64,000 bases of DNA, taken from positions 146,957-210,956 of IMG/VR virus record IMGVR_UViG_3300034101_004588; one strand, given 5' to 3'. The notes beneath the pieces are model-generated. The model was not told the origin of the DNA. It saw only the letters and a list, made by a program, of their open reading frames with translations, and did not search any database. Shown in pieces: positions 27,025-49,434 of the stretch. Position numbers and translations under genes: made by a program. Position 1 is the first letter of the stretch. Each line of letters begins with the position of its first letter.

Positions 27025-27471
27025 TTACCAGTTTTGTTCATAATATTCTGCTCTGGTTAAAGATGGAGAACCTAATATATTTTCTATTCTTGAAACTACT
27101 TCTTCATCATCAATATTACAAGGACCTCCTACATGCCAATTATATTCTTCTCTTGGTATGCGTTTTTCTCTATAGACATATATTGTAACTATTAATCCGT
27201 CTTCAAACTGTATTACCCATCTAGCTAAAACCTTATCGTCTTCTGTATAAATTGGTTTACCAAATTTATCTATCAATTGTTTGTGTGTTGTTTTTACGTA
27301 TCCTTTTAAACAAGTACCAGATATTTCTATATCATTGCTATTAATTTTTTTTATCTTATAGCGATTTGAAAAGGATCTCAAAGCTTGAACTTTATTTAAA
27401 TCTGCTTCTAAAAGAGATGCATAAACATTTTTTAAGGTTTTAAATTTTTTGGGTATATTACTTTTATTCAT
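27025..27471 (-). CDS. FG-x-P/W-x-I-x-F-x-DG domain protein
   Basis: LLEADLNKVQALRSF; LIDKFGKP...WVIQFEDG...WHVGG. Confidence 0.85.
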   Translation of the reverse strand: MNKSNIPKKFKTLKNVYASLLEADLNKVQALRSFSNRYKIKKINSNDIEISGTCLKGYVKTTHKQLIDKFGKPIYTEDDKVLARWVIQFEDGLIVTIYVYREKRIPREEYNWHVGGPCNIDDEEVVSRIENILGSPSLTRAEYYEQNW

Positions 27472-27472
27472 A

Positions 27473-27871
27473 TTAATACGAATTCCACATTTTTAACCAT
27501 TTATCATAATTTGGTTCTATTTTTCCGTCTATTACCAATTCTCTTAATACCACTTCTGCAACTTTGAAAAGGTGAGAAGTTGGAGGTATTTCTGCATCCA
27601 AACTAGTATATTCACTGTCTGAAAATCTTTTTAAACTTATTAATTCCATTTCTGGTTCTTCTAGAGCCCACTCAAACGTATACCTTGCTTCGTAATGGTC
27701 GTCTTTAGCAATAAAACTTAATATATAAATTTTATTGTCTTTATCATAATCTTCGTTTTCTATTATAAAATCCCTGCCAGGTCCTAAGTCTTTATCAAAA
27801 TCCATAAATTTTTTTAAACCTTGAATCTTATCATATTGAGATTCTAAAAGTATTTGATCCTTGGTTTTCAT
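27473..27871 (-). CDS. putative internal virion protein, paralog of the next gene
   Basis: MKTKDQILLESQYDKIQGLKKF. Confidence 0.85.
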   Translation of the reverse strand: MKTKDQILLESQYDKIQGLKKFMDFDKDLGPGRDFIIENEDYDKDNKIYILSFIAKDDHYEARYTFEWALEEPEMELISLKRFSDSEYTSLDAEIPPTSHLFKVAEVVLRELVIDGKIEPNYDKWLKMWNSY

Positions 27872-27886
27872 TTTTATTATTTAGGT

Positions 27887-28303
27887 TCAATAATCTGGTT
27901 TCCAAAAATGAGGCGGTATTTCTGGTTCCAGTTTACCTGCATCTACCAAGGCTTCTATCTTTTCTTCTGCGTCTATAAAAAGTTTTGAACCAGGTGTTAT
28001 TTCTGCTTCTAGATAATCATAATTTTCATCTGCATATCTTTTTAAACTCAAAAGTTTTATAATATGATCTGGATTCCAACCTTCGTATTTCCACCAAAAA
28101 TTATATCTTGCTTCATAATAATCATCTTTAGCTTTAAAGGATACCACATAAATTTTTGCTTGATAATTCGGAAATTCTGTGTCTTTATATAATATTTGAA
28201 AATGAGAAGGGTCTCCTAAATCCGATTCTCTTTCGGCAAACTTTTTAAGAGCTAAAATTTTATCTGTAGCTTCTCTTAATAATTGTAAATCCTTTTTATT
28301 CAT
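27887..28303 (-). CDS. putative internal virion protein, paralog of the previous gene
   Basis: MNKKDLQLLREATDKILALKKF; ATG at 28303. Confidence 0.85.
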   Translation of the reverse strand: MNKKDLQLLREATDKILALKKFAERESDLGDPSHFQILYKDTEFPNYQAKIYVVSFKAKDDYYEARYNFWWKYEGWNPDHIIKLLSLKRYADENYDYLEAEITPGSKLFIDAEEKIEALVDAGKLEPEIPPHFWKPDY

Positions 28304-28788
28304 GGACCATACCACCTAGTTGATGCTGTGAAATAATCTAAAAAGTCATTGTAATCAGGTTCATTATAAAATGTTGTCAAATAATCATAAGCTTTACTTC
28401 CTAATTCTTCTGTTAAATCTTCAGACCAATTTTTTTTAAATTTTTCATAACCGCCATAATTTTCTAAAGTATCTTTGGTTGCTTTATCGTACAAAGCTTG
28501 GTGTAAGAATCCTTCATACTCTTGTTGTATTTCTCGAGAAGACAAATGGTCATAATAAAAATCTACATTTATTGGATTTAATTCTATATTTCTTTTTACA
28601 TGGTCTAGATATTCTGGTAAAATAGACATATACAATTCTCTGGGAACACCCATGGAAGAGTTTTCATATTCGTCTATGGTTAGTTTTTTAACATGATCTA
28701 AAACATTAAGCTCTTTATTGGCAAATTGTTTAAACGCTTGTATCTTGTCGTATTGAGCTTCTAAAAGTATTTGGTCTTTATATTTCAT
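28300..28788 (-). CDS. putative internal virion protein
   Basis: MKYKDQILLEAQYDKIQAFKQF. Confidence 0.85.
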   Translation of the reverse strand: MKYKDQILLEAQYDKIQAFKQFANKELNVLDHVKKLTIDEYENSSMGVPRELYMSILPEYLDHVKRNIELNPINVDFYYDHLSSREIQQEYEGFLHQALYDKATKDTLENYGGYEKFKKNWSEDLTEELGSKAYDYLTTFYNEPDYNDFLDYFTASTRWYGP

Positions 28789-29129
28789 TAAACAAATAAT
28801 TCTACAACATCTTTAATATCTGGAATTATCATTTCTATATCATCTTGGTCTATCTCTTTTCCTTCTTTATCATAAAGAGGAGTTTCTAAATATTTTTGCG
28901 AAGATACCCAGTTTCTATAAAAATTATCAAATTCTGGTGTAGATAAAAATCCAGCAAATGTTTGTATAGCAGAATTTAATTTATCTATATGTTCATTGTA
29001 CTTGCTAATCATAAGACCGGCTTCTCGGCGATCTTTTTCATCTTTAGAAAAAGATTTTAGTCCTTGAATTTTTAGATTAGTTATTTCTTCTGCAGCTTCT
29101 TGTAATAATTGTAAATCTTTTTTTGTCAT
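28788..29129 (-). CDS. putative internal virion protein
   Basis: MTKKDLQLLQEAAEEITNLKIQGLKSF. Confidence 0.85.
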   Translation of the reverse strand: MTKKDLQLLQEAAEEITNLKIQGLKSFSKDEKDRREAGLMISKYNEHIDKLNSAIQTFAGFLSTPEFDNFYRNWVSSQKYLETPLYDKEGKEIDQDDIEMIIPDIKDVVELFV

Positions 29130-29446
29130 AATTGTTCACTTGCATAAATGCCTAATTTTTTGTGAGCTTCATCTCTGTTTAAGAAATGCCATTTGTTGTT
29201 AGTTGGGTGTATAAAAGCGAATCCTTCTTCAGGTTTTCCTTTATCATACCATTTATCGGCTTCTTCATCACTAGGAATACGACCTAATTTTTTAGGAAGA
29301 TATTCGTCAAATATTTCTCGAAAAACAAAACCATGACCCATGCGAGTTTTATCATGGAATATTTTTCCGTATACTTTAATAGCGGGGTAAAGCTTAATGC
29401 CTCCACGAGCTTCAAAAATCAGACAAATATAATATGTATTAAACAT
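29126..29446 (-). CDS. hypothetical protein
   Basis: 106-aa ORF after TAAATA. Confidence 0.8.
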   Translation of the reverse strand: MFNTYYICLIFEARGGIKLYPAIKVYGKIFHDKTRMGHGFVFREIFDEYLPKKLGRIPSDEEADKWYDKGKPEEGFAFIHPTNNKWHFLNRDEAHKKLGIYASEQL

Positions 29447-29476
29447 ATCATATATTTATAGAAACCAGGTGGTATT

Positions 29477-29995
29477 CTAAAATACTTGCTGCAAAAACTC
29501 TGCTACTTCTTTATCTTTAATAGATTGTCCTTCATGCAGAATCTCACAAACAACCTTATACATATCAAAAGCCTTGCGTTCAAAAAACTTTGTTGCCTCT
29601 TCATATCCTAGAGTCTCAATCCAACAATTCATTTGTGGGTATTGAGGAGCAGCATGGAAGATACATCCATTATGAAAATTACCAATCCAACACAAAAGAA
29701 AGATTGCTCCTTTGACACCTTTTTCTTTAACCATGTATTCAAAGAATACAGCTCGTTCTTCTGGGTCTTTACCTACATACCGATTGAGCTTGGTAATATA
29801 AGAACCGTCTAAAAAGATAATCGAACGGCCTTTAGAAAGAACATGATCCTTTAAAACGGAAACATTATTATCATTCATATAGACCTTACGAATAGTAGGC
29901 CATTTAACATTAACCCCTCTAGAGGAAAAAATAGACGAACCTATCAAAGGTTGTCGATTCATTGACACTTTTTTATTTTGACGAAGATCTATCAT
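29477..29995 (-). CDS. hypothetical protein
   Basis: 172-aa ORF. Confidence 0.8.
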   Translation of the reverse strand: MIDLRQNKKVSMNRQPLIGSSIFSSRGVNVKWPTIRKVYMNDNNVSVLKDHVLSKGRSIIFLDGSYITKLNRYVGKDPEERAVFFEYMVKEKGVKGAIFLLCWIGNFHNGCIFHAAPQYPQMNCWIETLGYEEATKFFERKAFDMYKVVCEILHEGQSIKDKEVAEFLQQVF

Positions 29996-30036
29996 GTTTA
30001 AAATGATAGATTAAATTGGTGGGAAATACAAGAATA

Positions 30037-30216
30037 TTATTCGGTTTTATATCTTTCTTTAATCCATTTAGATTTGAATTTTAAAGTCCAGTCGATCAAG
30101 GCTCGAGGAAATCCAATATCGTAACCCACTTTTTCTGACTCATACCATTTGTGTTTATTGATCTCTTCTTTCATAGCCAAGAATTCTCGGTAAAGGCTAG
30201 TTTTTTCTATATTCAC
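30037..30216 (-). CDS. DUF4032-like small protein (59 aa; missed by the ORF track)
   Basis: GTG start; MNIEKTSLYREFLAMKEEINKHKWYESEKVGYDIGFPRALIDWTLKFKSKWIKERYKTE. Confidence 0.75.
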   Translation of the reverse strand: MNIEKTSLYREFLAMKEEINKHKWYESEKVGYDIGFPRALIDWTLKFKSKWIKERYKTE

Positions 30217-30239
30217 TCTATCTATTAATATTTATCATT

Positions 30240-30710
30240 TTAAGAGGTTATACGAAACGCAAATTCAACACCATCATTAGATTTAACTATTTTAAAACCA
30301 TTTTGTTTATAAAAAGACATTAAATTTTTATGAGATGATTTGTTTTGCCCTGAAGAAATTTCTCCCGGAGATAATGCCATAAGGGTTCCTGAGGGATATT
30401 GCATGGCTAAAGTATTAATGATCTCTGAACCCCTACCTAATCCTCTTTGTGTAGAAAGTATTCTTAATAATTGAATCCATATATAGGTAAATTTTTTTGG
30501 TAGTTTTAAAGACCTTAGATATTTTGCTACCGGATCATTTTTGGGATCATCAAAATAAAAAAGATCAATAACCTCAGATATTGTCAGGTTTTCAGCAACG
30601 TCCCAATCGAAGTCTGCTATTTTTTTACCATCTTCTCGAACTTCTTCTCGAGACATATCAAATTCTAAAGACTCTAGAATTTGTTTTATTTTATTATTGA
30701 ACCGATTCAT
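30240..30710 (-). CDS. GNAT-family acetyltransferase
   Basis: TQRGLGRGSEII acetyl-CoA loop; LMSFYKQNGF. Confidence 0.75.
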   Translation of the reverse strand: MNRFNNKIKQILESLEFDMSREEVREDGKKIADFDWDVAENLTISEVIDLFYFDDPKNDPVAKYLRSLKLPKKFTYIWIQLLRILSTQRGLGRGSEIINTLAMQYPSGTLMALSPGEISSGQNKSSHKNLMSFYKQNGFKIVKSNDGVEFAFRITS

Positions 30711-31062
30711 TTTCAAACCAATAAATCATTCCATTAGGACCTTCTTCCATTTTTAGGTCATCATGTTTGATTCCTACTTTAGAAAGAAGATTGCCTAATC
30801 TTTCTCCAGTCGCTTGAAAATCAAATAAAGAATAATCCGTATTAAAAATTTGTTTATACATTTCATCTAAATCAGAAAACTTTTCTTGGTTATCATAAAT
30901 TTTCTTCTTAGAAAAAAGACTATTGCCGAACATTTCTTTCAAACGAGAAGCAAAGGTTTCAGACAATTCATCATAAGCTTTCATCTGAACTTTTTTCTGT
31001 TCTTTGGCTTGGTTAATTTTACCGTAAGTCTCTTCTAAGAGTATTTGATCTTTATTTTTCAT
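30694..31062 (-). CDS. putative internal virion protein
   Basis: MKNKDQILLEETY. Confidence 0.8.
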   Translation of the reverse strand: MKNKDQILLEETYGKINQAKEQKKVQMKAYDELSETFASRLKEMFGNSLFSKKKIYDNQEKFSDLDEMYKQIFNTDYSLFDFQATGERLGNLLSKVGIKHDDLKMEEGPNGMIYWFENESVQ

Positions 31063-31066
31063 AAAA

Positions 31067-31318
31067 TTATTCTTTAGATTCTGTATATTTTAGATGTCTT
31101 AATATATCTTCAAAGACCTCGACTACATTATTAAAATTACCCCAATAACCTAATCCATCTTGATTCTCGGCCTCATCAATATATTCATTAAAAGCTTCCA
31201 TGACCTTATTTTTAAAACGCCAGAGTTCTTCTTCTTGAAAATCTTGTAAGGCCTGTAGTTTTGGATTTACAATTTTATCCATTTCCGCTTCCAAGAGTAT
31301 TTGATCTTTAGATCGCAT
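31067..31318 (-). CDS. putative internal virion protein
   Basis: MRSKDQILLEAEMDKIVNPKLQALQDF. Confidence 0.8.
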   Translation of the reverse strand: MRSKDQILLEAEMDKIVNPKLQALQDFQEEELWRFKNKVMEAFNEYIDEAENQDGLGYWGNFNNVVEVFEDILRHLKYTESKE

Positions 31319-31378: not shown

Positions 31379-32032
31379 ATGGCTTATATCAATACCGATA
31401 TTCCTTTATTCTCTTGTCTGCTAGATACTAGCTTTCTTTATGATAAAGACCCAAGAACCACCCAAGAATATCTTAAAGTAGAGGTCTTTGGATTTACTTC
31501 TCTTAATCGAAGATGCGGTCTCTTCTCGGTTATGTCAGAAATGGGTAGTGTTCATACTCGAGTACCTCTTCATTACCTTATAGCCGAGGACACGGATAAT
31601 CCCTCTCATTACCCGCTCGACTGGTTGCAACTTTGGGATTCCTATTCTCCTTATGTGCAATGTATAAGATATGAGTACCTCAAAAACCTCACTTGTAAGA
31701 TCTGCCTGAAAGATAGGAACTATGAGTCGGCTCGCTATCTCATGACCTTTGATTGGTGCTATGGACCGGAATTCACCACCGGACAAAGTGAAAATCCGGG
31801 AGGTCATAAACAAGGACATCTACTAAAGGGCGATCACGGACAATACTATATACAACCGGGTAATAGAATAATCTGGAGAGACGGAGGAGCCTGGATTGGT
31901 AAAGAATTACAAGGGCATGAAAAATGGAAAGTCTTTTCTAAAGAGTTCTCTTGTGAACAAACAGGTTCTCGATGGTTTGCCGGAGAAGAAGAATTACACT
32001 TCTACCAATTTGAAAAGAATAAAGACAGGTGA
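31379..32032 (+). CDS. phage hypothetical protein
   Basis: ATG at 31379 (MAYINTDIP); LQLWD...YLMTFDW...HKQGH...QPGNRIIWRD pattern. Confidence 0.8.
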   Translation: MAYINTDIPLFSCLLDTSFLYDKDPRTTQEYLKVEVFGFTSLNRRCGLFSVMSEMGSVHTRVPLHYLIAEDTDNPSHYPLDWLQLWDSYSPYVQCIRYEYLKNLTCKICLKDRNYESARYLMTFDWCYGPEFTTGQSENPGGHKQGHLLKGDHGQYYIQPGNRIIWRDGGAWIGKELQGHEKWKVFSKEFSCEQTGSRWFAGEEELHFYQFEKNKDR

Positions 32033-32242
32033 TATAAAGATAAAGGGGTACCTATATAAAGGGGTAGGTACCGGGATTGCCCCGAGACCCGGGTATCGAT
32101 TATTCTCGTCTATTATTGTTTTTGAACTGCCGGGGTCCTAGGATACCGCCCGTTGTCGTATTAACTTGCTTTTCCCTAGAATCCGATTTATAATTCCGCG
32201 CCTAGGGTTTCTTGGTCAAGGGGTTCGAACCCAGGTGACCTT

Positions 32243-32542
32243 CTACAGCTCGTACCCTTCAGACTCTTTCTTAGACTGGTGTTGATCCACGTGCCTGGCT
32301 AGCCGGCGAAGCTCTTGGCGGCACATCTCCTTAGCTTCTTCATTAGCCGAGGACTCCAGAACCGTCATACAGATATTCACCGCCTCTTCCCAAGAAGGGG
32401 TTAGGTCAATGACTCGACGATTGGTGTTGGCAGGAAGAGCTTGGAAGGCTTCGGCCATCTCTTCATTAGCTTCGGACTCGGTGACATAGACTTCTTCACA
32501 TTGCACTTGAGTGTTGAAGTCATCGGTGTAGTTCTTATTCAT
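32243..32542 (-). CDS. hypothetical early protein
   Basis: 99 aa, directly behind promoter cassette. Confidence 0.8.
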   Translation of the reverse strand: MNKNYTDDFNTQVQCEEVYVTESEANEEMAEAFQALPANTNRRVIDLTPSWEEAVNICMTVLESSANEEAKEMCRQELRRLARHVDQHQSKKESEGYEL

Positions 32543-32552
32543 AACAGTTATT

Positions 32553-32581
32553 AGTGTAGAGACTATTTGGGGGAAACACCA
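32553..32581 (-). promoter_or_regulatory. repeated early promoter
   Basis: TGGTGT-TTCCCCCAAATAGTCTC-TACACT. Confidence 0.7.
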
Positions 32582-32680
32582 GACTTTCTTTTTATTCTCT
32601 CAAAGTAATTTTAACGATGAAAGTAATCCTGCCTTTGTATTATTTTATACCGTTGTATTAAATTGCGGACTGCTATGAGA

Positions 32681-32727: not shown

Positions 32728-32766
32728 CGTTGACACGGGTTCCTCTACTCAGAGGACCGAGAGTGT

Positions 32767-40068: not shown

Positions 40069-40404
40069 TTAATCTGTATCTTTAATGAACTTCATAAGCT
40101 GTCTACCCCAATCAAAGAGGTTTTCCGGAAATTCTTTAATAGTTTTCATACTATAGTAAAGATTAAATTCTTCAGGGGTCTTTCCAGGTTTATTTTGTAA
40201 TTGTTCTAAGACGTCTTCAATCCTTTGATTAATTTCTTCTTCTTGACCTATCAAGACCTTTTCTATATCTAATATAAGCCCAAAAACCTGATTGATCTTA
40301 CGGGAGAGCTCCATTATATCTTTTTCTTTATTAGCAAATTCTTTAAAGGCATCAACCTTATTTTGCACCTGATTATAGGCTTCGGATAAACTTTTATTAT
40401 TCAT
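40069..40404 (-). CDS. putative internal virion protein
   Basis: LSEAYNQVQNKVDAFKEF. Confidence 0.8.
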   Translation of the reverse strand: MNNKSLSEAYNQVQNKVDAFKEFANKEKDIMELSRKINQVFGLILDIEKVLIGQEEEINQRIEDVLEQLQNKPGKTPEEFNLYYSMKTIKEFPENLFDWGRQLMKFIKDTD

Positions 40405-40984
40405 TGGTCCATTTATCTATCTTTCTTAACATTTCGGAGAGTTTATGAATTCCTTGGAAGTCATCTCCTAAAATACTATATTCATTTTCTGATCCCCAAT
40501 GAGCCTTACGATAGGCAGGGGGCATATGGTTTAGATTAAATCCTAGGTCTTTGGCATTAGGAGCCCATAAGAGAAATTCTACTTCATTTTTAAGTAAGCG
40601 AGCCAGGATCTCTACTATAACATAAGCCTTATAGGTTCCTTCTAAACCAAAGATATGAAAGTCTCTTTTTTGATTCATTTCAAATTTATAGTTAGTATCT
40701 TGAGGGGTAGGTTTTAAAGGATCGGTATATATCAATAAAGGTTTAGCAGTTGCTCGATTAGGAATTTCCCAGGCCCATACATCATCGAAACCGGACTCTT
40801 GAGTAATTTCATCGTTCTCGGTTATATATTTGTGGGGTCCCAATACTCTTTCTAGATCGGCAATGGAAGCTTTAATGGTCAATTCATTTTTATATTGGTC
40901 TTTAATTTCTTGTTTAAAGAAATTTTTAAAGCCTTGAGCCTTAACATTAGATAAGGTTTCTTCTACAAGTTGATTAAATTTCAT
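40397..40984 (-). CDS. putative internal virion protein, divergent FG-x-P domain
   Basis: MKFNQLVEETLSNVKAQGFKNF; LERVLGP...WAWEI. Confidence 0.85.
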   Translation of the reverse strand: MKFNQLVEETLSNVKAQGFKNFFKQEIKDQYKNELTIKASIADLERVLGPHKYITENDEITQESGFDDVWAWEIPNRATAKPLLIYTDPLKPTPQDTNYKFEMNQKRDFHIFGLEGTYKAYVIVEILARLLKNEVEFLLWAPNAKDLGFNLNHMPPAYRKAHWGSENEYSILGDDFQGIHKLSEMLRKIDKWTNE

Positions 40985-40998
40985 GGATCTATTATTTA

Positions 40999-41412
40999 TT
41001 ATTCTCCGGGTGGAAAGAGAACCTCGTCTTGTAAGGGTTGTTCTAAACGAAATTCCCAGTGATAGGTTTTCTTGCCTAAAGTTGGATTATTAGGTTCGGT
41101 GTAAAGTTCATTCTTATATCCATAGTCATTTAGAGCCTGAGATATGTTTCTTAATTCTCGCACTTTAATCTTAATACGTTGATCAACTCCTATGGCAAAG
41201 AAATCTTCATCAATCCAATCAAATTTTATATAAGAAGATAAATGAGGAACTGTTTGGTTTACTATGTTCTTTATAACTTTGCTTTCGTTATTAGATTCTT
41301 CCGCAGTTCTTTTAGAGGTGTTTTGGGAAAAACTTTTTAAAGCCTGGAGCTTATCATTCTCTAATACCGTTTGATAAACTTCTTTTAAAATTTGTAAATC
41401 CTTATCACCCAT
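40999..41412 (-). CDS. putative internal virion protein
   Basis: MGDKDLQILKEVYQTVLE-NDKLQALKSF. Confidence 0.85.
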   Translation of the reverse strand: MGDKDLQILKEVYQTVLENDKLQALKSFSQNTSKRTAEESNNESKVIKNIVNQTVPHLSSYIKFDWIDEDFFAIGVDQRIKIKVRELRNISQALNDYGYKNELYTEPNNPTLGKKTYHWEFRLEQPLQDEVLFPPGE

Positions 41413-43579: not shown

Positions 43580-44143
43580 TTAAGACCTTGATATACTCAA
43601 TATTTGTGCCTGAGGTATGAGTTTTTCTATTTTAATCTTGGTTCTAGCTCTTTGCTCTTTTTCATCTTCTTCTGATTTTATCCACATCGGCCAAGGTTTA
43701 AGAGTACCAAAGTGAATATAGAATTTTTTTGGTGATGTTATTGTTTTAAAATAATTTAATACCCCTTCTTCGGATTCAAATTGAAAAGGAGGTATTTTAG
43801 ACGAAGTATATATAGATCCTAAAGAATTATCTTCAAGTTCAAAATACCAAGAAACTGTGATAACGGTAGAAACTATATTTTTATTTTTGCTATCAAAAAG
43901 TCGAGTGTGATGTACATCATAAAAAGTAACATCTGTTTCACTAGGATCTCCGAGACTCTCAAAAACATTTTTTGGAATTACTTCAATAGTACTTTTCATT
44001 TGAGGGTTTATCTCAAACTCATCTCTAGTAAATTTACGTTTAATCCTGGTGTAAGAAAAAAAAGATTGTAAACCTCTCAACTTATCATTTTCATTGATAG
44101 AATGGTAAGTTTTTAATAAAGATTGTAGGTCTTTGTTATTCAT
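43580..44143 (-). CDS. putative internal virion protein
   Basis: SINE-NDKLRGLQSF; SLGDP...W. Confidence 0.85.
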   Translation of the reverse strand: MNNKDLQSLLKTYHSINENDKLRGLQSFFSYTRIKRKFTRDEFEINPQMKSTIEVIPKNVFESLGDPSETDVTFYDVHHTRLFDSKNKNIVSTVITVSWYFELEDNSLGSIYTSSKIPPFQFESEEGVLNYFKTITSPKKFYIHFGTLKPWPMWIKSEEDEKEQRARTKIKIEKLIPQAQILSISRS

Positions 44144-44793
44144 CCGTGTATTAGTCTTCTAAACATACCAGCATATTCATCTAAATAATCTGGCAATAAT
44201 TCTAAATTCATGGCATTTTCAAATTCTTTTAATTCTTGTGGAGTCAATGTTCCTTCATTATAACCTGGAGATAAATTTTCAATAGCACTGTTCATATTTG
44301 AGACCATTTCTTGTTGATGTTTTTTTAATATTTTATAATTTTTATCTAAATGCTTTTGCATGTTTTTAACATCCTCTGCAAATTGTGATATTTCTTTATT
44401 GTTTTGTGCAAAGCTTTTTAATCCTTCAAGTTTATTATTTTCTTCTATTGTACCTTCTAAAGTTTTTTTAAGTTCTTCTGCTGCGTCTTCTAAAACTCTT
44501 ACAAAGCCATAAATGTTATCTGCATTAGATTTAGCATCTTTTGAAGCTTCAATTTCATTTTTTAATACTCCACGAAGCCAGGCCATATATTCTTTCTCTT
44601 GAAAGTCATCATCATAAAGTTCAGAAAGAAAATCATCGAATTTATGAAAGAAATCTACAATTCTGTTTTGAATGTATCGTGTTCTTTGTTCGAAATTTTC
44701 TTGTTTACTAAAACTTTTGAGTGCCTGAAGTTTATCATTTTCATTAATCATTTGATAAGCTTTACCTAGAGATTGTAGATCTTTATCTTTCAT
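44140..44793 (-). CDS. putative two-module internal virion polyprotein
   Basis: MINE-NDKLQALKSF and internal TIEE-NNKLEGLKSF. Confidence 0.85.
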   Translation of the reverse strand: MKDKDLQSLGKAYQMINENDKLQALKSFSKQENFEQRTRYIQNRIVDFFHKFDDFLSELYDDDFQEKEYMAWLRGVLKNEIEASKDAKSNADNIYGFVRVLEDAAEELKKTLEGTIEENNKLEGLKSFAQNNKEISQFAEDVKNMQKHLDKNYKILKKHQQEMVSNMNSAIENLSPGYNEGTLTPQELKEFENAMNLELLPDYLDEYAGMFRRLIHG

Positions 44794-44803: not shown

Positions 44804-45322
44804 TTAACGGGTTTTTTGTTTATTTTTAAAAACAATTCTATCAATACGTTCTTGTATGTCTTTTGCTATCTCGCCAAGTTCTTTGTTTTGTATAGAAGGA
44901 TCGGTTGCTCCTTTATATCTAAAATATACTCTATAACTTATATCACGATAATCATCTCGATAATCTTCGTCTTCATCGCGAGGCAATATAAACTTTTTTG
45001 CTAGGTAATGTTCCAACCAAAAAGGATCTATGTGGTTTGTGCTTATAGCCATTTTTACATTATCTGCAAATTCAATATACCAAGATATTGTTCCATATTT
45101 CCAATCAAGACCACGGTGATATTCATAATGTGAAATTTCATTTGGAGGGCCAAATATATCTGCTATTCGAGTTACATCGTGATGAAAATTTTCAACAAAA
45201 TAAGAATCTTTATATTTTTTAGGATTAAATGTACCTTTGACCTGAAAACGCAAAACGTCATAGGTATAAAAATCTTTAAATCCTTTTAATTTTTTAGCTG
45301 CTCTATTATCTTGATTTTCCAT
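44804..45322 (-). CDS. FG-x-P/W-x-I-x-F domain protein
   Basis: KKLKGFKDF; IFGPP...WYIEFADN. Confidence 0.85.
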   Translation of the reverse strand: MENQDNRAAKKLKGFKDFYTYDVLRFQVKGTFNPKKYKDSYFVENFHHDVTRIADIFGPPNEISHYEYHRGLDWKYGTISWYIEFADNVKMAISTNHIDPFWLEHYLAKKFILPRDEDEDYRDDYRDISYRVYFRYKGATDPSIQNKELGEIAKDIQERIDRIVFKNKQKTR

Positions 45323-46173
45323 TACAGTTTTAAAAGCGTTTGTAATCGGCTTACAACGTCTTGATACTTATTTGCTGGAGAAACTCCAACCCACCAATCT
45401 GTAGGTTCATCTTCTAAAAGATCAAAGTTGTTGCGGGTTAAGTCTTCATCGTCGTCATGTTCTTTGGTGACAAATCCATACATATGAACAAAGGCTCCAT
45501 CATTAAATTCTATATACCAATCAGCCTTAGCTTGATCGGTATCAAAGTAAGCGTCAATATCTCCTTGATAGTCTAAAGAATTAGGAGTCGGATTTATATC
45601 TGACATCTTATCCATCATATCTTCATAACTTACTCCCCCAATAAAAAATTCGGTAGGGCTCATGTCATCTTTTGCTTCTAAGGCTCTTTCTTTCCATTCT
45701 TTATAACTTAAAAATTGAAAGTTTTGAGACATTTTAAAAGATTTTAAACCTTCTAATTTACTTTCTGATATCTGTTCCGGCAATGTTTGTTCTAGATGTT
45801 CACTATAATCTTTAGATATTTTCTCTGGACCAATAACAAACCATTCCAAGATTTCATTTTCTAGCATTTGATCTACCGACAAAGCTAATACAGAGGCGAT
45901 ATAAATTTTTCCTCCGTTGGTAAAGGTTATTTCCCAAGCAATTTTAGTATCTCCTCCTTTAGTTTTATCTATTGAAGGTTCTACTCCTTTAAGATAATTT
46001 TTTAAAATAGGATAGGTAGCAGTAAATTCAAAAACTCCTTCTTTTATTGAAGGGTCTTTAAGAACCAAATCCCATAGATTTACTGGTTTAACTTTCTCTA
46101 TATCAAATCTATTAGCAAAAGACTTTAAAGCGTCTAACTTATTATTTTCTTTTAGATATTGCTTAAAGTTCAT
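45322..46173 (-). CDS. putative two-module internal virion polyprotein
   Basis: MNFKQYLKE-NNKLDALKSF; QISE-SKLEGLKSF; WEITFTNG and WYIEFNDG. Confidence 0.85.
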   Translation of the reverse strand: MNFKQYLKENNKLDALKSFANRFDIEKVKPVNLWDLVLKDPSIKEGVFEFTATYPILKNYLKGVEPSIDKTKGGDTKIAWEITFTNGGKIYIASVLALSVDQMLENEILEWFVIGPEKISKDYSEHLEQTLPEQISESKLEGLKSFKMSQNFQFLSYKEWKERALEAKDDMSPTEFFIGGVSYEDMMDKMSDINPTPNSLDYQGDIDAYFDTDQAKADWYIEFNDGAFVHMYGFVTKEHDDDEDLTRNNFDLLEDEPTDWWVGVSPANKYQDVVSRLQTLLKL

Positions 46174-48326
46174 ATTATGTTTAGAGGTATATTATTTATA
46201 TTAAATTTTTCTGTGACCTCTTCTCTTTTTTTATTAGACCAAACATCAAAAGAATAATTTTGATCGTAATCTATATTTGAACCTTTGGCGTGAGTTTTAA
46301 AAATAGCAATTAAGGTCCCGTCTCCAAATATTATTCCCCACCCTGTATTAAATCTATAGTCCATGCGAAAGTGGGGATAATGAAACACTGTACCTAATCT
46401 TTTTTCTAATTGGGGGTAGGAACTATTGATTTGAAAGGCAAAATATTTATATATTTCCGGAGCCAATCTATCCGGATTAACTATTTCTATAATTTTATTA
46501 CTTTTTTGAAAAGCTTTTAATCCTTCTAGTTTATTACTTTCCTCTTGCACATACACTTCTGAATTTGGAAACATAGAGGATATTCTATTTTTTAAATCTG
46601 GTTTACTTGTTGTTTTTGCTTTCGATTTTTTTGATGGAATATAAACATACCATCTTTCATTTGCAGTTTCTAAATCATAATTAAAATGGTTTTGTCTTTG
46701 CTGTGTATTTTTTAAATAATCCATCATATTACTATTGAGACCTGGTGTAATTATACATTTTAAACCGTCTTTAAATGTAAATGCCCATAATACATATTCA
46801 AATAAAGATTGAGAACTAGTATCCCATTTCCAAGGATCGAAATTGCCTGCAGGAAGATTAAGTTTTTGTGGTTCTCCAAATTTGTTTTTAACTTCTTTTA
46901 AATTAGATACAAAAGATCCCAAACACTCAAATCCCGCATCAGAAAAGTTTGGGTCTTTAGAAATTTCAAATTGTTGAGTATCTAAAAATTGTTTAAATCC
47001 TAATATTTTATTATTTTCTTTTATAATTTGTTTGTTGAGAATGGTTTTTATTCTTTCAACTACATCTAAAGCATTTTGTTCATCCTGATCATTAGCTACA
47101 TAAACATCCCAAGGATGATCTTCATCCGGATCTAATTCTCCAAACATTTCCATAGCATCTTCATTGGTTAATCCTTGTAAAATAACTTTATTACCATCAC
47201 CAAACTCTATACCCCAATTGTAAATAATTGTGTCACCGTTACGAGGATTGACATCTCTTTCAATTCGCGGTTCTCCAAATTTAGATTTTAGATTGTTTAT
47301 CGAAGCATAAAAGTCATCTGTCGGATCTGCGTGCACGTAATTATCAAACCTGTATTCATTATTAATATTTTTTTCCCAATTTTTAAGAGTTTGTTGGTCT
47401 ATTGATCTGAATTGCAATTTACTAAAAAAACTTTTTAAATTTATTAATTTATTATTTTCTTCTATATTTCTTCTAGTCCAAGGCACAACATCTAAATTTA
47501 TTTTTGTTTGTCCTAATATAAATTTAAGACGATCTGATAAATCTTCTTTTTCTTCTGCCCCTTCATAAGTTCCATAAACAGTCCATTTGTCGCTAAAATA
47601 AACAGTTATATCTGCTTTAGAAACCGATCCTGTCTTTAAATAACGATCGGTTACATCTTTTGGAATATAGTTACTGGTGATATACATTGCCTTGCCATCA
47701 GCAAAAGTAATAACCCACATAAAAGCTGAATAAGTGGTATTTGGTAAAGTTTCTACAAAAGGTTTACCAAACAATTGAACTATTTCATTATAATTTTTAA
47801 AAAACTGTCCCATCATTGTAAGATTAGTTTTAGGTAAATCTTTTAAACCCGAGAGTTTAATTATTTTATAACGATTATAAAAATTTTTAAATCCTTGTAA
47901 TTTATTTTCTTTTAAAAGTTTACCACCCTTTTCTTTTATAGCTTGTTTTATTCTTGCAATGTAATCTTTTGGATTCATACCAGATACCGTCCAATAAGTT
48001 ATTTGTTCTAGATTTTTCTTTGCGTTTATGCCAAAAGGTTTTATTTCTTTTAAAGCAGATACAGAAGCCTTTGCTCCGTCTTTAAAAGTAACCAACCATA
48101 TCCAATCTGTTTCATCAAACCCTATTTTTTTTTCTTTTGGAGGTTTACCAAAAGTTTTTAATAAAGCATCATAAGAAACATGAAATCCTTCTACTCTATT
48201 TTCTTGAGAAGGATACATTGGTTGTAAAAAATCACTATATTCTTCCGGTGAATAATCATTTGAAACAAATGCTATTCCGTGAGAAGCTGAAAAATCTTTT
48301 AAAGCTTTTAATTTAAAATTATTCAT
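46170..48326 (-). CDS. five-module putative polyprotein
   Basis: five FG-x-P...W-x-x-x-F-x-DG domains separated by E-N/S-(N)K-L-x-x-(L/F)-K-x-F linkers. Confidence 0.9.
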   Translation of the reverse strand: MNNFKLKALKDFSASHGIAFVSNDYSPEEYSDFLQPMYPSQENRVEGFHVSYDALLKTFGKPPKEKKIGFDETDWIWLVTFKDGAKASVSALKEIKPFGINAKKNLEQITYWTVSGMNPKDYIARIKQAIKEKGGKLLKENKLQGFKNFYNRYKIIKLSGLKDLPKTNLTMMGQFFKNYNEIVQLFGKPFVETLPNTTYSAFMWVITFADGKAMYITSNYIPKDVTDRYLKTGSVSKADITVYFSDKWTVYGTYEGAEEKEDLSDRLKFILGQTKINLDVVPWTRRNIEENNKLINLKSFFSKLQFRSIDQQTLKNWEKNINNEYRFDNYVHADPTDDFYASINNLKSKFGEPRIERDVNPRNGDTIIYNWGIEFGDGNKVILQGLTNEDAMEMFGELDPDEDHPWDVYVANDQDEQNALDVVERIKTILNKQIIKENNKILGFKQFLDTQQFEISKDPNFSDAGFECLGSFVSNLKEVKNKFGEPQKLNLPAGNFDPWKWDTSSQSLFEYVLWAFTFKDGLKCIITPGLNSNMMDYLKNTQQRQNHFNYDLETANERWYVYIPSKKSKAKTTSKPDLKNRISSMFPNSEVYVQEESNKLEGLKAFQKSNKIIEIVNPDRLAPEIYKYFAFQINSSYPQLEKRLGTVFHYPHFRMDYRFNTGWGIIFGDGTLIAIFKTHAKGSNIDYDQNYSFDVWSNKKREEVTEKFNINNIPLNII

Positions 48327-48625
48327 ATACCTTCAAAAAATCCGTTTCTTTCTAAAAAACTATTTAAAATTTCTTTAGCTCTTTCTCTTTCTCCATACCA
48401 ATGTACACCATATAGCTCATTTTCTGGATCATGAATTGTATTATGTACGAATTGCCATAACACCTGCCAATGACTAGATCCTTGAATGACTGTTCTTAAA
48501 TTTAATTGTTCTGGTATATGTTCTCTCATGAAGTCTAAAATCTTTTCATCCAATTCTGAATGTCTGGAAAAAGATTTTAATGCAGACAATTTATTATTTT
48601 CTTTTATATATTTTTTAAAATTCAT
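48323..48625 (-). CDS. putative internal virion protein
   Basis: MNFKKYIKE-NNKLSALKSF. Confidence 0.85.
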   Translation of the reverse strand: MNFKKYIKENNKLSALKSFSRHSELDEKILDFMREHIPEQLNLRTVIQGSSHWQVLWQFVHNTIHDPENELYGVHWYGERERAKEILNSFLERNGFFEGI

Positions 48626-48628
48626 TGG

Positions 48629-49057
48629 TTATCTTTTATTTAATAAATGATCTAATCGTTCTAAAATTTCTTGTTCTCTTCCTATTGGACCAGTTACTTG
48701 TGCTATAACTGGGCTGTCTGGAATAACATTATTTTCCTCATCATAATGCAAATCATGAACTTCAGTACTTAATATAACTTTAACACCATCGTTAAATTCA
48801 ATCCCCCATTCTAAAAATTTTGCTCTACCTGGTCCTTCGTCTGTGAAATCGGGTTCTCCAAATAAATCTATCAAACTATCATATCTATCTACAACCATTT
48901 CTGTCATATAATAATCCATGCCCAACTTTTCTATATCTTTTACTGACATAGAAAAATAAGGTTTTGCATCAAATCTTTTTTTTACCATATATGCTCCTGC
49001 AAATTGTTTAAATGCTTCTAATTTATTTTCTGTATAATATTTTAAAAAAGTTTTCAT
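48629..49057 (-). CDS. FG-x-P/W-x-I-x-F-x-DG domain protein
   Basis: YYTE-NKLEAFKQF; LFGEP...WGIEFNDG. Confidence 0.85.
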   Translation of the reverse strand: MKTFLKYYTENKLEAFKQFAGAYMVKKRFDAKPYFSMSVKDIEKLGMDYYMTEMVVDRYDSLIDLFGEPDFTDEGPGRAKFLEWGIEFNDGVKVILSTEVHDLHYDEENNVIPDSPVIAQVTGPIGREQEILERLDHLLNKR

Positions 49058-49434
49058 GTTAATATATTAGTTAATCTTTCAATCACTTCTTTTGATTTAT
49101 TTTCTGGAGCAGATACACTATAAGCATAAAATTCATCTCCTCTCGACAAATATCTTAACACGGATAATGTATTATCTCCAAATTCTATAATCCAGAGAGG
49201 ACCCATCATGCCGTAAGCTCCGGTTATTGGTTCTCCTAAAAGTTTTTTAACATCTTTATAAGGAGGAGCTTTAGGAAAAACAATTGTTTTATAATTAGCT
49301 AATATATTAGGATCTGCTAATTCGGGATATATTCTGTTAATATCCGCTCGAGTTCTCATCCCTTCTTTGTTTGCTGCTATAATTTGATTGGCTTTAACAA
49401 ATTGTTGAAAACTTTTTAATTTATTTTTATCCAT
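49054..49434 (-). CDS. FG-x-P/W-x-I-x-F domain protein
   Basis: MDKNKLKSFQQF; LLGEP...WIIEFGDN. Confidence 0.8.
   Translation of the reverse strand: MDKNKLKSFQQFVKANQIIAANKEGMRTRADINRIYPELADPNILANYKTIVFPKAPPYKDVKKLLGEPITGAYGMMGPLWIIEFGDNTLSVLRYLSRGDEFYAYSVSAPENKSKEVIERLTNILT

What the first reader, a model, noticed from the sequence alone, without database searches (positions are those of the whole stretch)
27025..49434. Expansion of one small domain (FG-x-P ... W-x-I-x-F-x-DG ... W-x-V) to about a dozen diverged copies
Seen in 27025-27471, 44804-45322, both halves of 45322-46173, five times in 46170-48326, 48629-49057 and 49054-49434, and more weakly in 40397-40984 and 43580-44143. The core is conserved while loops are hypervariable. 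The (L/F)G-x-P hairpin pattern recalls BLIP/BamE-like alpha-beta folds, which are protein-binding inhibitor scaffolds (inference). A diversified binder scaffold delivered with the genome suggests an anti-defence inhibitor repertoire.
Basis: partly seen in the sequence, partly recalled or inferred. Interest (0 to 1): 0.68.

Follow-up and report, generated by a model that had tools for sequence, protein, structure and literature searches.

The report
Leader-tagged domain family, lake phage
A 211-kb T4-related phage from lake water carries twelve diverged copies of one small viral domain of unknown function. Each copy follows a conserved leader that looks like phage T4's capsid-targeting and protease-cleavage signal, so they may be proteins packed in the head and injected with the DNA, but this is not shown.

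Summary
A model built from the five repeats of the 718-aa protein finds 12 full copies of a 125-190 aa module on the minus strand: 27025-27471, 43580-44143, 44804-45322, two in 45322-46173, five in 46170-48326, 48629-49057 and 49054-49434. 40397-40984 is at best a very weak 13th copy.

The core folds confidently as beta-alpha-beta4-alpha, a TBP-like arrangement. It is not convincingly BLIP or BamE. It belongs to a wide, unnamed, virus-only family of about 100-aa proteins (314 database clusters, no Pfam or PHROG match).

What is special here is a portable leader before every module and on about ten unrelated small proteins: (I/L)-x-E-N-(N/D)-K-L-x-(A/G)-(L/F)-K-S-F. The N-terminal peptides MKTFLKYYTE, MNFKQYLKE and MKTKDQILLE mimic T4's capsid-targeting sequence MKTYQEFIAE.

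The phage has a T4-type portal, an S77 prohead protease, a scaffold rich in (L/I)-x-E, and a capsid protein with I-E-E before A at about residue 60. Relatives fuse, split and swap modules exactly at the leaders. Orthologues are under purifying selection (dN/dS 0.04-0.31).

My best reading, confidence about 0.45, is head-packaged cargo, with multi-module proteins cut into single domains by the prohead protease. An anti-defence role is untested.

The parts
27025..27471 (-). Copy 1, 148 aa. The most canonical copy: it keeps the wide family's I-Y-x-Y-R and W-H-V-G-G motifs and has a leader-like N-K-V-Q-A-L-R-S-F.
Evidence: tblastn hits single-domain homologues in cultured phages at E 9e-12 to 3e-3.
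43580..44143 (-). Copy 2, 187 aa, with long loop insertions. N-terminus M-N-N-K-D-L-Q-S-L-L, followed by the leader.
44804..45322 (-). Copy 3, 172 aa.
   Evidence: HMM E 1.5e-11. Orthologue in L028 is 79% identical, dN/dS 0.17.
45322..46173 (-). Two-module protein, 283 aa. Copies 4 (45772-46173) and 5 (45325-45771) are joined at Q-I-S-E-S-K-L-E-G-L-K-S-F. The N-terminus is M-N-F-K-Q-Y-L-K-E.
   Evidence: HMM E 2.1e-11 and 2e-8. Against L028 the two modules are 63% and 91% identical, dN/dS 0.24 and 0.06.
46170..48326 (-). Five-module protein, 718 aa. Copies 6-10 lie at 47916-48326, 47463-47915, 47022-47462, 46545-47021 and 46173-46544. Each junction carries (L/I/V)-x-E followed by N-K-L-x-x-(L/F)-K-x-F.
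   Evidence: Module alignment. The junction sequences are listed.
48629..49057 (-). Copy 11, 142 aa, N-terminus M-K-T-F-L-K-Y-Y-T-E. This is the protein modelled with AlphaFold2.
   Evidence: HMM E 2.6e-11. Model pLDDT 86, pTM 0.77; residues 1-10 have low confidence and the helix runs over residues 2-21.
49054..49434 (-). Copy 12, 126 aa counted from the ATG at 49434.
40397..40984 (-). Leader-bearing ORF, 195 aa. Possibly a very diverged 13th copy in its N-terminal half (L-G-P-H ... W-A-W-E-I ... L-L-I-Y ... F-H-I-F-G).
   Evidence: Missed by the HMM. hhalign with its orthologue added: probability 71% against A1 and 2.8% against A2.
49427..50233 (-). Leader-bearing protein, 268 aa, with two leaders (at the N-terminus and at residue 135). 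Its bodies are not secure copies of the domain.
48323..48625 (-). Leader-bearing protein, 100 aa, with an unrelated His/Trp-rich body. It is the most conserved gene of the array.
   Evidence: Leader. 94% identical to the L028 orthologue, dN/dS 0.04.
44140..44793 (-). Leader-bearing helical protein, 217 aa, with two leaders.
50242..50628 (-). First gene of the array, 128 aa, with two leader-like motifs. A sigma-70-like site (TTGAAA, 16 nt, TATTAT) lies at 50825-50798 just upstream.
27473..29129 (-). Four further small ORFs (27473-27871, 27887-28315, 28300-28788, 28788-29129). They have M-K-x-K-D-Q-I-L-L-E-type N-termini followed by K-I-x-x-(L/F)-K-x-F, and unrelated bodies.
40069..41412 (-). 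Leader-bearing ORFs 40069-40404 and 40999-41412, with unrelated bodies.
58743..60653 (+). T4 gp20-type portal protein. It is context for the packaging hypothesis. The S77 prohead protease, scaffold and major capsid protein lie outside the window, at G000:C1:13115-16442.
   Evidence: phrog_213, E 2e-94. 27% identity to cyanophage gp20. Peptidase_S77, E 2e-29. Sequences.

Best explanation
The region encodes a family of small modular proteins built from two separable parts.

**Part 1: the domain.** It is a 100-aa alpha+beta domain (beta-alpha-beta4-alpha) and belongs to a widespread, uncharacterised, virus-only family. Elsewhere that family occurs as single small accessory proteins.

**Part 2: the leader.** It is clade-specific and portable. 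It consists of a 9-19 residue N-terminal peptide ending in (I/L)-x-E, followed by the amphipathic helix N-(N/D)-K-L-x-(A/G)-(L/F)-K-S-F.

**Proposed mechanism (inferred).** The leader works like the capsid-targeting sequence of phage T4 internal proteins.
- It takes the proteins into the scaffolding core of the prohead.
- The phage's gp21-type (S77) prohead protease cuts after the Glu.
- Two-module and five-module proteins are thereby released as single domains of about 14-18 kDa.
- These stay in the head and are ejected with the DNA.
- In the cell, the twelve diverged surfaces would bind different host or defence targets at the very start of infection.

**Shown:** the family, its fold class, the leader and its portability, the T4-type head genes, module exchange at the leaders, and purifying selection.

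**Inferred:** packaging, cleavage, ejection, and any target.
For: **Family and fold**
- HMM E-values and alignment A1.
- AlphaFold2 models at pLDDT 86 and 87.
- 314 database clusters match at E <= 1e-3. Most are about 100 aa and lack the leader.
- BFVD and ESM Atlas neighbours are all viral and unnamed.

**Leader**
- The core pattern K-[LIVM]-x-x-[LFIM]-K-x-[FY] gives 25 matches in the genome, 22 of them in minus-strand ORFs of window 27.4-50.7 kb. Shuffled proteins give 3.8 +/- 2.2.
- Over 79 instances from this phage and three related sources, the logo is (I/L)-x-E-N-(N/D)-K-L-x-(A/G)-(L/F)-K-S-F.
- 60 of the 79 have [LIVMF]-x-E within six residues upstream, against a 13% background. Every true internal module junction has it.
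- Ser is encoded by both AGY and TCN codons and Leu by both CTN and TTR. Upstream DNA is unrelated. Conservation is therefore at the protein level.
- The leader sits on at least 10 unrelated bodies.
- A second tag, M-(K/R)-x-K-D-Q-I-L-L-E, sits on 10 or more window ORFs. It also sits on 7 otherwise unrelated ORFs of a sister phage that lacks the domain family.

**Likeness to T4**
- The T4 capsid-targeting sequence is MKTYQEFIAE (PMC8442874). Residues 4 and 7 matter for targeting and residues 8 and 10 for processing; T4 propeptides are 10-19 residues long (PMC9026906).
- Here M-K-T-F-L-K-Y-Y-T-E has an aromatic residue at 4 and 7, a hydrophobic one at 8 and Glu at 10.
- M-N-F-K-Q-Y-L-K-E has the same spacing shifted by one. 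M-K-T-K-D-Q-I-L-L-E has I7, L8 and E10.
- T4 Alt is cut at I-T-E and L-T-E (PMC5694885).
- T4-even internal proteins share only their targeting sequence and vary between phages (PMC3012670).

**Head machinery**
- gp20-type portal and Peptidase_S77 above its cut-off.
- The putative scaffold has 14 (L/I)-x-E in 295 aa, against 1.2% per residue genome-wide, p = 2e-5.
- The capsid protein has C-I-E-E followed by A-G-G at about residue 60. From memory, T4 gp23 is cut after L-T-E at residue 65; PMC9026906 gives the 65-residue propeptide.

**Fluid ORF boundaries, fixed module boundaries**
- In L027 and L028, orthologous modules are distributed differently among ORFs.
- In L028 an extra module sits between the N-terminal peptide and the orthologue of 48629-49057. 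Modules 3-5 of the 718-aa protein are replaced by a non-family body behind a leader.
- Fusion and fission would be neutral if the products are cut at every leader.

**Other**
- In the model, residues 1-10 have low confidence (pLDDT 57) and the helix that follows is confident. This fits a flexible propeptide.
- Orthologue dN/dS is 0.04-0.31.
- Each window module's best match is an orthologue in another phage (34-50% identity), not a paralogue (33% or less). The repertoire is therefore old and maintained.
Against: - There is no virion proteome, and no cultured relative. The closest cultured portal is 27% identical.
- The leader resemblance rests on 9-10 residues, and on specificity rules measured in T4, not in this phage.
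- The most conserved part of the leader (N-N-K-L-x-x-L-K-S-F) lies after the proposed cut. T4 has no counterpart for it.
- That part is modelled as a confident helix, so it may simply belong to the fold or bind some other common partner.
- The 718-aa protein has further (L/I/V)-x-E sites inside its modules.
- T4 internal proteins are basic. These modules range from pI 4.2 to 9.4.
- The array is on the strand opposite to the portal block and is preceded by a sigma-70-like site. This fits early, non-structural genes, although the scan is no better than chance overall.
- About 30 tagged ORFs would be an unusually large cargo.
- Single-domain relatives in other phages have no leader and lie among small accessory genes.
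Confidence: 0.45

Rival explanations
1. These are ordinary cytoplasmic early accessory proteins that are not packaged. The shared leader is an N-terminal helix that belongs to the fold, or that docks all these proteins onto one common partner such as a host hub protein, a phage chaperone or an oligomerisation partner. The multi-module proteins act uncut, as beads on a string.
For: - The array lies in a non-syntenic, accessory-type region on the strand opposite to the head genes.
- A sigma-70-like site lies just upstream.
- The K-L-x-x-L-K-S-F helix is modelled with pLDDT about 83-89.
- Leaderless relatives lie among small accessory ORFs in cultured phages.
- Leaderless tandem two-domain relatives exist: P0014, P0016 and P0019.
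- Module charge is mixed.
Against: - It does not explain why (I/L)-x-E is as conserved as the helix and is present at every internal junction.
- It does not explain why the N-terminal peptides copy the length and residue spacing of the T4 targeting sequence (PMC9026906, PMC8442874).
- It does not explain why a different tag with the same L-x-E at residues 8-10 sits on unrelated proteins in two phages.
- One helix packing into at least ten different folds is unlikely, though docking onto a common partner remains possible.
Confidence: 0.33
2. The proteins are packaged, but as structural or physical head contents, for example DNA-condensing, pressure-setting or scaffold-assisting internal proteins like T4 IPII and IPIII. 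In this reading they are not a diversified inhibitor repertoire.
For: - The same leader and protease evidence applies as for the best explanation.
- T4 IPIII affects head assembly, and the roles of IPII and IPIII are unknown (PMC9026906).
- Orthologues are under plain purifying selection, with no gene-wide positive selection.
Against: - Twelve paralogues at 15-27% identity, each kept as an orthologue line in relatives, suggest distinct functions rather than bulk filler.
- pI ranges from 4.2 to 9.4, so many modules are acidic and unlikely to bind DNA.
- A sister phage with similar head genes lacks the family altogether.
Confidence: 0.12
3. This is the first reader's reading: BLIP/BamE-like inhibitor domains, homologous to beta-lactamase-inhibitor or SmpA/OmlA proteins.
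For: A local profile hit of the helix plus G-x-P element to both repeats of 3d4e, a putative beta-lactamase inhibitor protein, at E 1.2e-3.
Against: - No Pfam hit to BLIP or SmpA_OmlA.
- Fold searches with two models do not rank BLIP or BamE. BamE is at Foldseek rank 35 with TM 0.35, and none appears in the top 50 of VIA-align.
- The topology has an extra N-terminal strand and a C-terminal helix, which makes it TBP-like.
- There is no signal peptide or lipobox.
Confidence: 0.04
4. The domain is an enzyme or a small-ligand binder. The wide family keeps an aromatic and charged patch (I-Y-D-W-K and W-H-I-G-G).
For: In the 63-sequence alignment, G, P, K, W, F, D, G, Y, K, W, G and G are at least 90% conserved. 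Copy 27025-27471 keeps W-H-V-G-G.
Against: - Eleven of the twelve window copies have lost these residues.
- There is no match to any enzyme family.
- The structural neighbours are binding or platform domains.
Confidence: 0.06

Closest known systems
Phage T4 internal proteins IPI, IPII, IPIII (and Alt) with their capsid-targeting sequence
   Same: - Small proteins of about 8-20 kDa with unrelated or fast-diverging bodies.
- They share only a short N-terminal peptide that ends in (I/L)-x-E at residues 8-10.
- They are encoded in variable regions of a phage with a gp20 portal, a gp21 (S77) protease and a scaffold rich in cleavage motifs.
- IPI* is a compact alpha/beta inhibitor of a host restriction enzyme (PMC3012670, PMC9026906).
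   Different: - There is no sequence or detected fold relation to IPI, IPII or IPIII.
- A second conserved element (N-N-K-L-x-x-L-K-S-F) follows the proposed cut.
- About 30 tagged ORFs here, against 4-5 in T4.
- Tandem multi-module proteins with a site at every junction; T4 has no such polyprotein cargo.
- Many modules are acidic.
- Packaging and cleavage are not shown here.
Paralogous ejection and inner-body protein families of giant phages phiKZ and SPN3US
   Same: Several diverged paralogues are packed in the head. They are processed after Glu by a T4-related prohead protease, and paralogues share identical N-terminal propeptides (PMC5694885).
   Different: - The protease family differs (S80), and so does the motif (A/S/G-x-E).
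- Those proteins are large and are not built from repeated 100-aa domains.
- No homology was found.
Unnamed virus-only family of about 100-aa proteins
   Same: - Examples are hypothetical proteins of Methylophilales phage Melnitz, Flavobacterium phage immuto, Prochlorococcus phage P-SCSP2 and Streptomyces phage BRock. Foldseek also matches unnamed Tupanvirus and Fadolivirus proteins.
- Same domain by sequence profile, by tblastn from copy 27025-27471 and by predicted fold (TM 0.64-0.76).
   Different: - Those are single, leaderless copies, rarely tandem pairs.
- They keep I-Y-D-W-K and W-H-I-G-G, which the array copies here have lost.
TBP-like fold domains (TBP repeat, RNase HIII N-domain, adaptin appendage platform, KA1, phosphoglucomutase C-domain; 6z1p chain AR)
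   Same: Same order of secondary-structure elements, beta-alpha-beta4-alpha. VIA-align Z is 4-7.7 over 60-110 residues.
   Different: - Z stays below 8, which the tool rates as compatible with a common arrangement only.
- Sequence identity is 3-15%.
- No function can be carried over.
BLIP / BamE (SmpA_OmlA) / L-G-x-P proteins
   Same: A helix ending in (L/F)-G-x-P leads into a beta strand. There is a weak local profile hit to 3d4e.
   Different: The overall topology and the fold-search rankings do not agree. There is no export signal.

Membership tests
T4-type capsid-targeted internal proteins | N-terminal propeptide of 10-19 residues with targeting residues and (I/L)-x-E at its end | tested here: met
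   - N-termini M-K-T-F-L-K-Y-Y-T-E, M-N-F-K-Q-Y-L-K-E and M-K-T-K-D-Q-I-L-L-E, compared with T4 MKTYQEFIAE (PMC8442874).
- The T4 residue roles are given in PMC9026906.
- This is a resemblance of pattern only; there is no homology statistic for so short a peptide.
T4-type capsid-targeted internal proteins | The phage has a gp21-type prohead protease and a scaffolding core | tested here: met
   Peptidase_S77 at E 2e-29, above its cut-off. The adjacent 295-aa helical protein has 14 (L/I)-x-E motifs, p = 2e-5.
T4-type capsid-targeted internal proteins | The protein is present in the mature head and cleaved at the motif | not testable with these tools
   This needs virion mass spectrometry or N-terminal sequencing. 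No RNA or proteome data are available; only DNA contigs from lake metagenomes were found.
T4-type capsid-targeted internal proteins | Sequence or fold homology of the mature part to IPI, IPII, IPIII or Alt | tested here: not met
   No PHROG or Pfam hit. No IPI* among the fold matches. This is not required in T4-even phages, where only the targeting sequence is shared (PMC3012670).
BLIP-like / BamE (SmpA_OmlA) | Pfam family match | tested here: not met
   No hit for any copy or any relative.
BLIP-like / BamE (SmpA_OmlA) | An alpha2-beta4 fold that superposes on BLIP or BamE | tested here: not met
   BamE is at Foldseek rank 35 with TM 0.35. It is absent from the VIA-align top 50. The only trace is a local helix plus G-x-P profile hit to 3d4e at E 1.2e-3.
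Unnamed viral 100-aa family (alignment A2) | A significant profile match over the whole core | tested here: met
   A profile of the 12 window copies retrieves 314 clusters at E <= 1e-3. Most match profile positions of about 30-135. Copy 27025-27471 hits members by tblastn.
Unnamed viral 100-aa family (alignment A2) | Conserved I-Y-D-W-K and W-H-I-G-G motifs | tested here: inconclusive
   Kept, in variant form, only in 27025-27471. Lost in the other eleven copies.
TBP-like fold | beta-alpha-beta4-alpha with an antiparallel sheet packed by the two helices | tested here: inconclusive
   The order of elements fits. Matches to TBP, RNase HIII-N, KA1, PGM-C and the adaptin platform reach Z 4-5.6, and the best match is Z 7.7. 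These values lie within the range the tool rates as a common arrangement.

The most novel reading that the evidence does not exclude
A T4-superfamily phage packs polyproteins into its prohead and uses the prohead protease as a polyprotein-processing enzyme. This would release a dozen different folded domains as an injected repertoire of binders against host defence or takeover targets. The leader would serve at once as address label, cleavage site and recombination joint, letting modules be swapped between phages. No phage is known to make its injected cargo in this way.
Probability: 0.25. Interest if true: 0.85.

Novelty: new variant of a known kind. Interest (0 to 1): 0.62.

Why it matters
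**If the leader is a capsid address and cleavage site**
- This uncultured lake phage would show that the T4 way of loading injected proteins is old and portable.
- It would also show that it can be scaled up to tens of cargo proteins, including polyproteins.
- It would give a sequence rule for predicting injected proteins in environmental T4-like phages.
- It would supply a new set of targeting tags for loading foreign proteins into phage heads.

**In any case**
- The finding defines a widespread, unnamed viral domain: 314 database clusters, found in phages, with structural look-alikes in two giant viruses.
- It provides twelve natural surface variants of one scaffold in a single genome. That is a good starting set for finding what the domain binds.

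Tried and rejected
**Searches that gave nothing**
- Megablast of the array against 50,697 phage records: no match.
- Pfam and PHROGs on all copies, on relatives and on leader-only ORFs: nothing meaningful.
- Word-index protein search with one copy: only the copy itself.
- Search of five related virus records, and of 60 kb of the sister genome, with the family profile and the leader pattern: nothing. The sister phage therefore lacks the family, though not the M-K-x-K-D-Q-I-L-L-E tag.
- tblastn of the two-module protein against phages: no match.

**Fold searches**
- Foldseek against the PDB with both models: no match at E <= 1e-3.

**Promoter scans**
- T4 late-promoter octamer TATAAATA: under-represented (11 and 13 found, 42 expected per strand) and not placed before head genes. 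It is uninformative on timing.
- Sigma-70 and terminator scan: no better than shuffles.

**Complex prediction**
This is evidence neither for nor against binding.

**Other**
- hhalign of the N-half of 49427-50233: only the leader aligns.
- Gene-wide dN/dS shows no positive selection. dS of 0.6-2.2 is near saturation, and two sequences cannot test individual loop sites.
- No alternative genetic code was used.


Full report
**What the window is**

- The window is bases 146,957-210,956 of a single 210,956-bp virus record with 31% G+C, rated 99% complete.
- It carries about 20 tRNA genes and a tmRNA.
- It has a portal protein related to T4 gp20: phrog_213 at E 2e-94, and 27% identity to cyanophage portals.
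- Outside the window the genome has a Peptidase_S77 (T4 gp21-type) prohead protease, E 2e-29, above the curated cut-off. A 295-aa helical protein and a 487-aa major capsid protein follow it.
- The same DNA occurs almost unchanged in lake-water metagenomes: five runs, each from a different study, hold at least half of its sampled words, one of which may be the source sample.
- It is therefore a large, uncultured, distant member of the T4 superfamily from fresh water.

**Check of the observation**

- The 718-aa product of 46170-48326 divides into five modules of 124-159 aa that align from end to end.
- A profile made only from these five finds 27025-27471, 44804-45322, both halves of 45322-46173 and 48629-49057 at E about 1e-8 to 1e-11. 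It finds 49054-49464 at 7e-7 and 43580-44143 at 1e-3, among all 519 ORFs of the genome.
- After iteration, twelve full-length copies score 1e-20 to 1e-36.
- In their alignment the Pro of F-G-x-P and the Trp of W-x-I-x-F-x-D-G are invariant. Phe, Asp and the Val of W-x-V are at least 90% conserved. Pairwise identity is 15-27%.
- Two loops vary in length by up to about 30 residues: one after G-x-P and one before W-x-V.
- 40397-40984 is not detected by the profile. With its orthologue added it reaches hhalign probability 71% against the family, but that alignment includes the leader. I count it as a possible, very diverged copy.

**The domain**

- AlphaFold2 with the twelve copies as alignment gives pLDDT 86 and pTM 0.77 for 48629-49057.
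- The elements in order are: a long N-terminal helix, a strand and two short helices, then strand-helix-(F-G-x-P)-four strands-helix.
- A profile search of 1.84 billion representative proteins finds 314 clusters at E <= 1e-3.
- About twenty of the 150 listed clusters carry leader plus core, several of them with more than one module. They come from relatives of this phage.
- The rest are proteins of about 100 aa that match only the core. Their consensus is G-T-x-x-x-G ... Y-x-x-L-V-x-x-F-G-x-P ... E-W-x-I-x-F-x-D-G-x-x-A-T-I-Y-D-W-K ... W-H-I-G-G.
- None has a Pfam or PHROG family or a name.
- Members occur as single hypothetical genes in Methylophilales phage Melnitz, Flavobacterium phage immuto and Prochlorococcus podovirus P-SCSP2, among runs of small accessory ORFs.
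- Copy 27025-27471 still has W-H-V-G-G and hits these proteins directly by tblastn. It bridges the array copies and the wide family.
- A second model, of a 101-aa member with 63 relatives, gives pLDDT 87 and pTM 0.81 and a clean beta-alpha-beta4-alpha.
- In BFVD it matches 13 viral proteins at E <= 1e-3, all uncharacterised. They include proteins of Streptomyces phage BRock and Tupanvirus; a Fadolivirus protein lies just at that threshold.
- ESM Atlas neighbours are all viral 'hypothetical protein' clusters.

**Which fold**

- Foldseek finds no PDB match at E <= 1e-3 with either model.
- VIA-align against 48,161 chains ranks a Tetrahymena mitoribosomal protein first with both models: 6z1p_AR at Z 7.0 and 7.7, the latter with rmsd 2.8 A over 95 residues.
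- Next come the adaptin and COPI appendage platform, TBP, the RNase HIII N-domain, KA1, the phosphoglucomutase C-domain and the RnlA/LsoA domains at Z 4-5.6.
- From established fold classification, these are TBP-like beta-alpha-beta4-alpha arrangements. The Z values are in the range the tool calls a common arrangement.
- BamE appears at Foldseek rank 35 with TM 0.35.
- The only link to BLIP-like proteins is a local profile hit (E 1.2e-3) of the helix plus G-x-P element to both repeats of 3d4e.
- The twelve copies share no set of polar residues, which argues against an enzyme.

- Every module begins with K-L-x-(A/G)-(L/F)-K-x-F.
- This pattern occurs 22 times in minus-strand ORFs between 27.4 and 50.7 kb. 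Three more matches lie elsewhere in the genome, and 3.8 +/- 2.2 are expected in shuffled proteins.
- It is also found on ORFs with unrelated bodies: 27473, 27887, 28300, 28788, 31067, 40069, 40999, 44140 (twice), 48323, 49427 (twice) and 50242.
- Over 79 instances from this phage, L027, L028 and database relatives, the logo is (I/L)-x-E-N-(N/D)-K-L-x-(A/G)-(L/F)-K-S-F.
- 60 of the 79 have [LIVMF]-x-E within six residues upstream, against 13% at random places. All true internal junctions have it.
- Codons for Ser (AGY and TCN) and Leu (CTN and TTR) differ among copies, and the DNA upstream of the genes is unrelated. Selection therefore acts on the peptide.
- In other lake metagenome contigs, many pieces match only the 37-44 nt that encode leaders and then run on unlike. 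The leader is thus shared by a larger pool of genes in the community.
- The N-termini fall in two classes: M-N-F-K-x-Y-(I/L)-x-E with M-K-T-F-L-K-Y-Y-T-E, and M-(K/R)-x-K-D-Q-I-L-L-E.
- The second class also heads ORFs that have no K-L-x-x-L-K-S-F motif (16010-16774, 25735-27012, 30694-31062).
- It also heads seven otherwise unrelated ORFs in a sister phage (portal 68% identical) that lacks the domain family. One of those carries a Pfam GP88 domain.

**Why I read the leader as a capsid address and cleavage site**

- The three T4 internal proteins and Alt enter the prohead core through short N-terminal propeptides of 10-19 residues.
- For IPIII the first ten residues suffice. Residues 4 and 7 matter for targeting, and residues 8 and 10 for processing by gp21 (PMC9026906).
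- The T4 peptide is MKTYQEFIAE (PMC8442874). Alt is cut at I-T-E and L-T-E (PMC5694885).
- Among T-even phages the internal proteins are diverse and share only this sequence. IPI* is an injected inhibitor of a restriction enzyme (PMC3012670).
- Here M-K-T-F-L-K-Y-Y-T-E has aromatic residues at 4 and 7, a hydrophobic residue at 8 and Glu at 10.
- M-N-F-K-Q-Y-L-K-E has the same spacing one place earlier. M-K-T-K-D-Q-I-L-L-E has I7, L8 and E10.
- The phage's own head proteins fit a retained (L/I)-x-E specificity. The putative scaffold has 14 such motifs in 295 residues against 1.2% per residue genome-wide, p = 2e-5.
- The capsid protein has C-I-E-E followed by A-G-G near residue 60. This is where T4 gp23 loses its 65-residue propeptide (PMC9026906).
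- In the model, residues 1-10 are the least confident part and the helix that follows is confident, as expected for a flexible propeptide ahead of a folded protein.

**Evolution of the array**

- L027 is an 11.9-kb contig. It has a syntenic row of 13 leader-bearing genes, and flanking genes 60-65% identical to the window's.
- L028 is an 8.9-kb contig from a closer relative.
- Each window module has its best match in another phage (34-50% in L027, 59-100% in closer relatives), not among its paralogues (33% or less). The duplications are therefore old and each line is kept.
- ORF boundaries are not kept. Modules 1, 3, 4 and 5 of the 718-aa protein and module b of the 283-aa protein are spread over 362-, 295- and 421-aa proteins in L027, in another order.
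- In L028 the orthologue of 48629-49057 has an extra module inserted between the N-terminal peptide and its own leader.
- Also in L028, modules 3-5 are replaced by a non-family body that starts with a leader.
- All these events have their joints at leaders.
- Window-to-L028 dN/dS is 0.04-0.31, with dS 0.6-1.1 for all but one pair (2.2). The genes are functional. Constraint differs several-fold even within one protein (modules a and b: 0.24 and 0.06).
- Free fusion and fission, together with strictly conserved junction motifs, is what one expects if the products are cut at every junction. It is also compatible with independent domains on a string.

**What speaks against it**

- Nothing shows packaging, cleavage or ejection.
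- The best-conserved part of the leader lies after the proposed cut and has no T4 counterpart.
- There are further (L/I/V)-x-E triplets inside modules.
- Module pI ranges from 4.2 to 9.4, unlike the basic T4 internal proteins.
- The array is on the strand opposite to the portal block and follows a sigma-70-like site at 50825-50798. The scan as a whole is no better than chance, and T4's own internal-protein genes are, from my memory, also read from early promoters.
- The T4 late-promoter octamer is uninformative here.
- A complex prediction of the protease with a leader peptide gave no answer.

**Verdict**

- The expansion is real, and the domain is a member of a broad, unnamed viral family.
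- It has a TBP-like, not BLIP-like, predicted fold.
- The new feature is its combination with a portable leader that resembles the T4 capsid-targeting and gp21-cleavage signal, down to the positions mapped by mutation in T4. This leader is repeated at every junction of the multi-module proteins.
- I put 0.45 on head packaging with processing into single modules.
- I put 0.33 on non-packaged early proteins that share a docking or structural helix.
- The rest goes to the other readings.

Noticed in passing
window 15538-15996 (-): A full-length tmRNA gene (Rfam RF00023, 135 bits, E 1e-52) that ARAGORN did not report. It lies next to the tRNA cluster and just downstream of a tag-bearing ORF (16010-16774).
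   Followed up: no
window 208-14898, 37260-39179 (-): About 20 tRNA genes, all on the minus strand. ARAGORN finds 17; Rfam adds five that ARAGORN missed, at 10835, 12169, 12425, 14668 and 14828.
   Followed up: no
window 16010-16774, 25735-27012, 27473-31318, 40999-44793 (-); L022-L024 (sister phage G001): A second N-terminal tag, M-(K/R)-x-K-D-Q-I-L-L-E-x-x-Y, heads 10 or more ORFs with unrelated bodies here and 7 in a sister phage. One of the sister-phage ORFs carries a Pfam GP88 domain. It may mark a larger set of proteins with one common fate.
   Followed up: partly
window 32000-39000: An island of 45-47% G+C in a 30% G+C genome. It is packed with small minus-strand ORFs and contains three tRNA genes. 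Some ORFs have orthologues at about 60% identity in L027. Only unknown-function PHROGs hit (phrog_12224 at E 4e-45).
   Followed up: partly
window 22800-53200: The 30 kb between conserved blocks has almost no counterpart in the sister phage G001, where 38.6 kb of other small ORFs occupy the same place. It is a hyperplastic accessory region.
   Followed up: partly
window 48323-48625 (-): A leader-bearing 100-aa protein with a His/Trp-rich body (H-W-Q-V-L-W-Q-F-V-H-N-T-I-H ... H-W-Y-G-E). It is the most conserved gene of the array: 94% identity to the L028 orthologue and dN/dS 0.04. It may bind a metal.
   Followed up: no
window 54089-58711 (+): A 1,540-aa ORF directly upstream of the portal with a weak von Willebrand factor A signal (E 1e-4, below the cut-off). 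It is 44% identical in the sister phage.
   Followed up: no
window 21231-22817 (-), 61671-62840 (+); genome 1216-4197: Several paralogues of a 'virion structural protein' family (phrog_1645 and phrog_5838) are scattered on both strands.
   Followed up: no
window 27473-27871 and 27887-28315 (-): Two neighbouring paralogues share both tags and a Y-E-A-R-Y-x-F-x-W motif. This is another small tagged family.
   Followed up: no
models m903823292b4e and mce58f44698dd: Both models have the same top structural match, chain AR of the Tetrahymena mitoribosome (6z1p). Foldseek gives probability 0.98 and TMq 0.61; VIA-align gives Z 7.7. I could not find out what that chain is.
   Followed up: no
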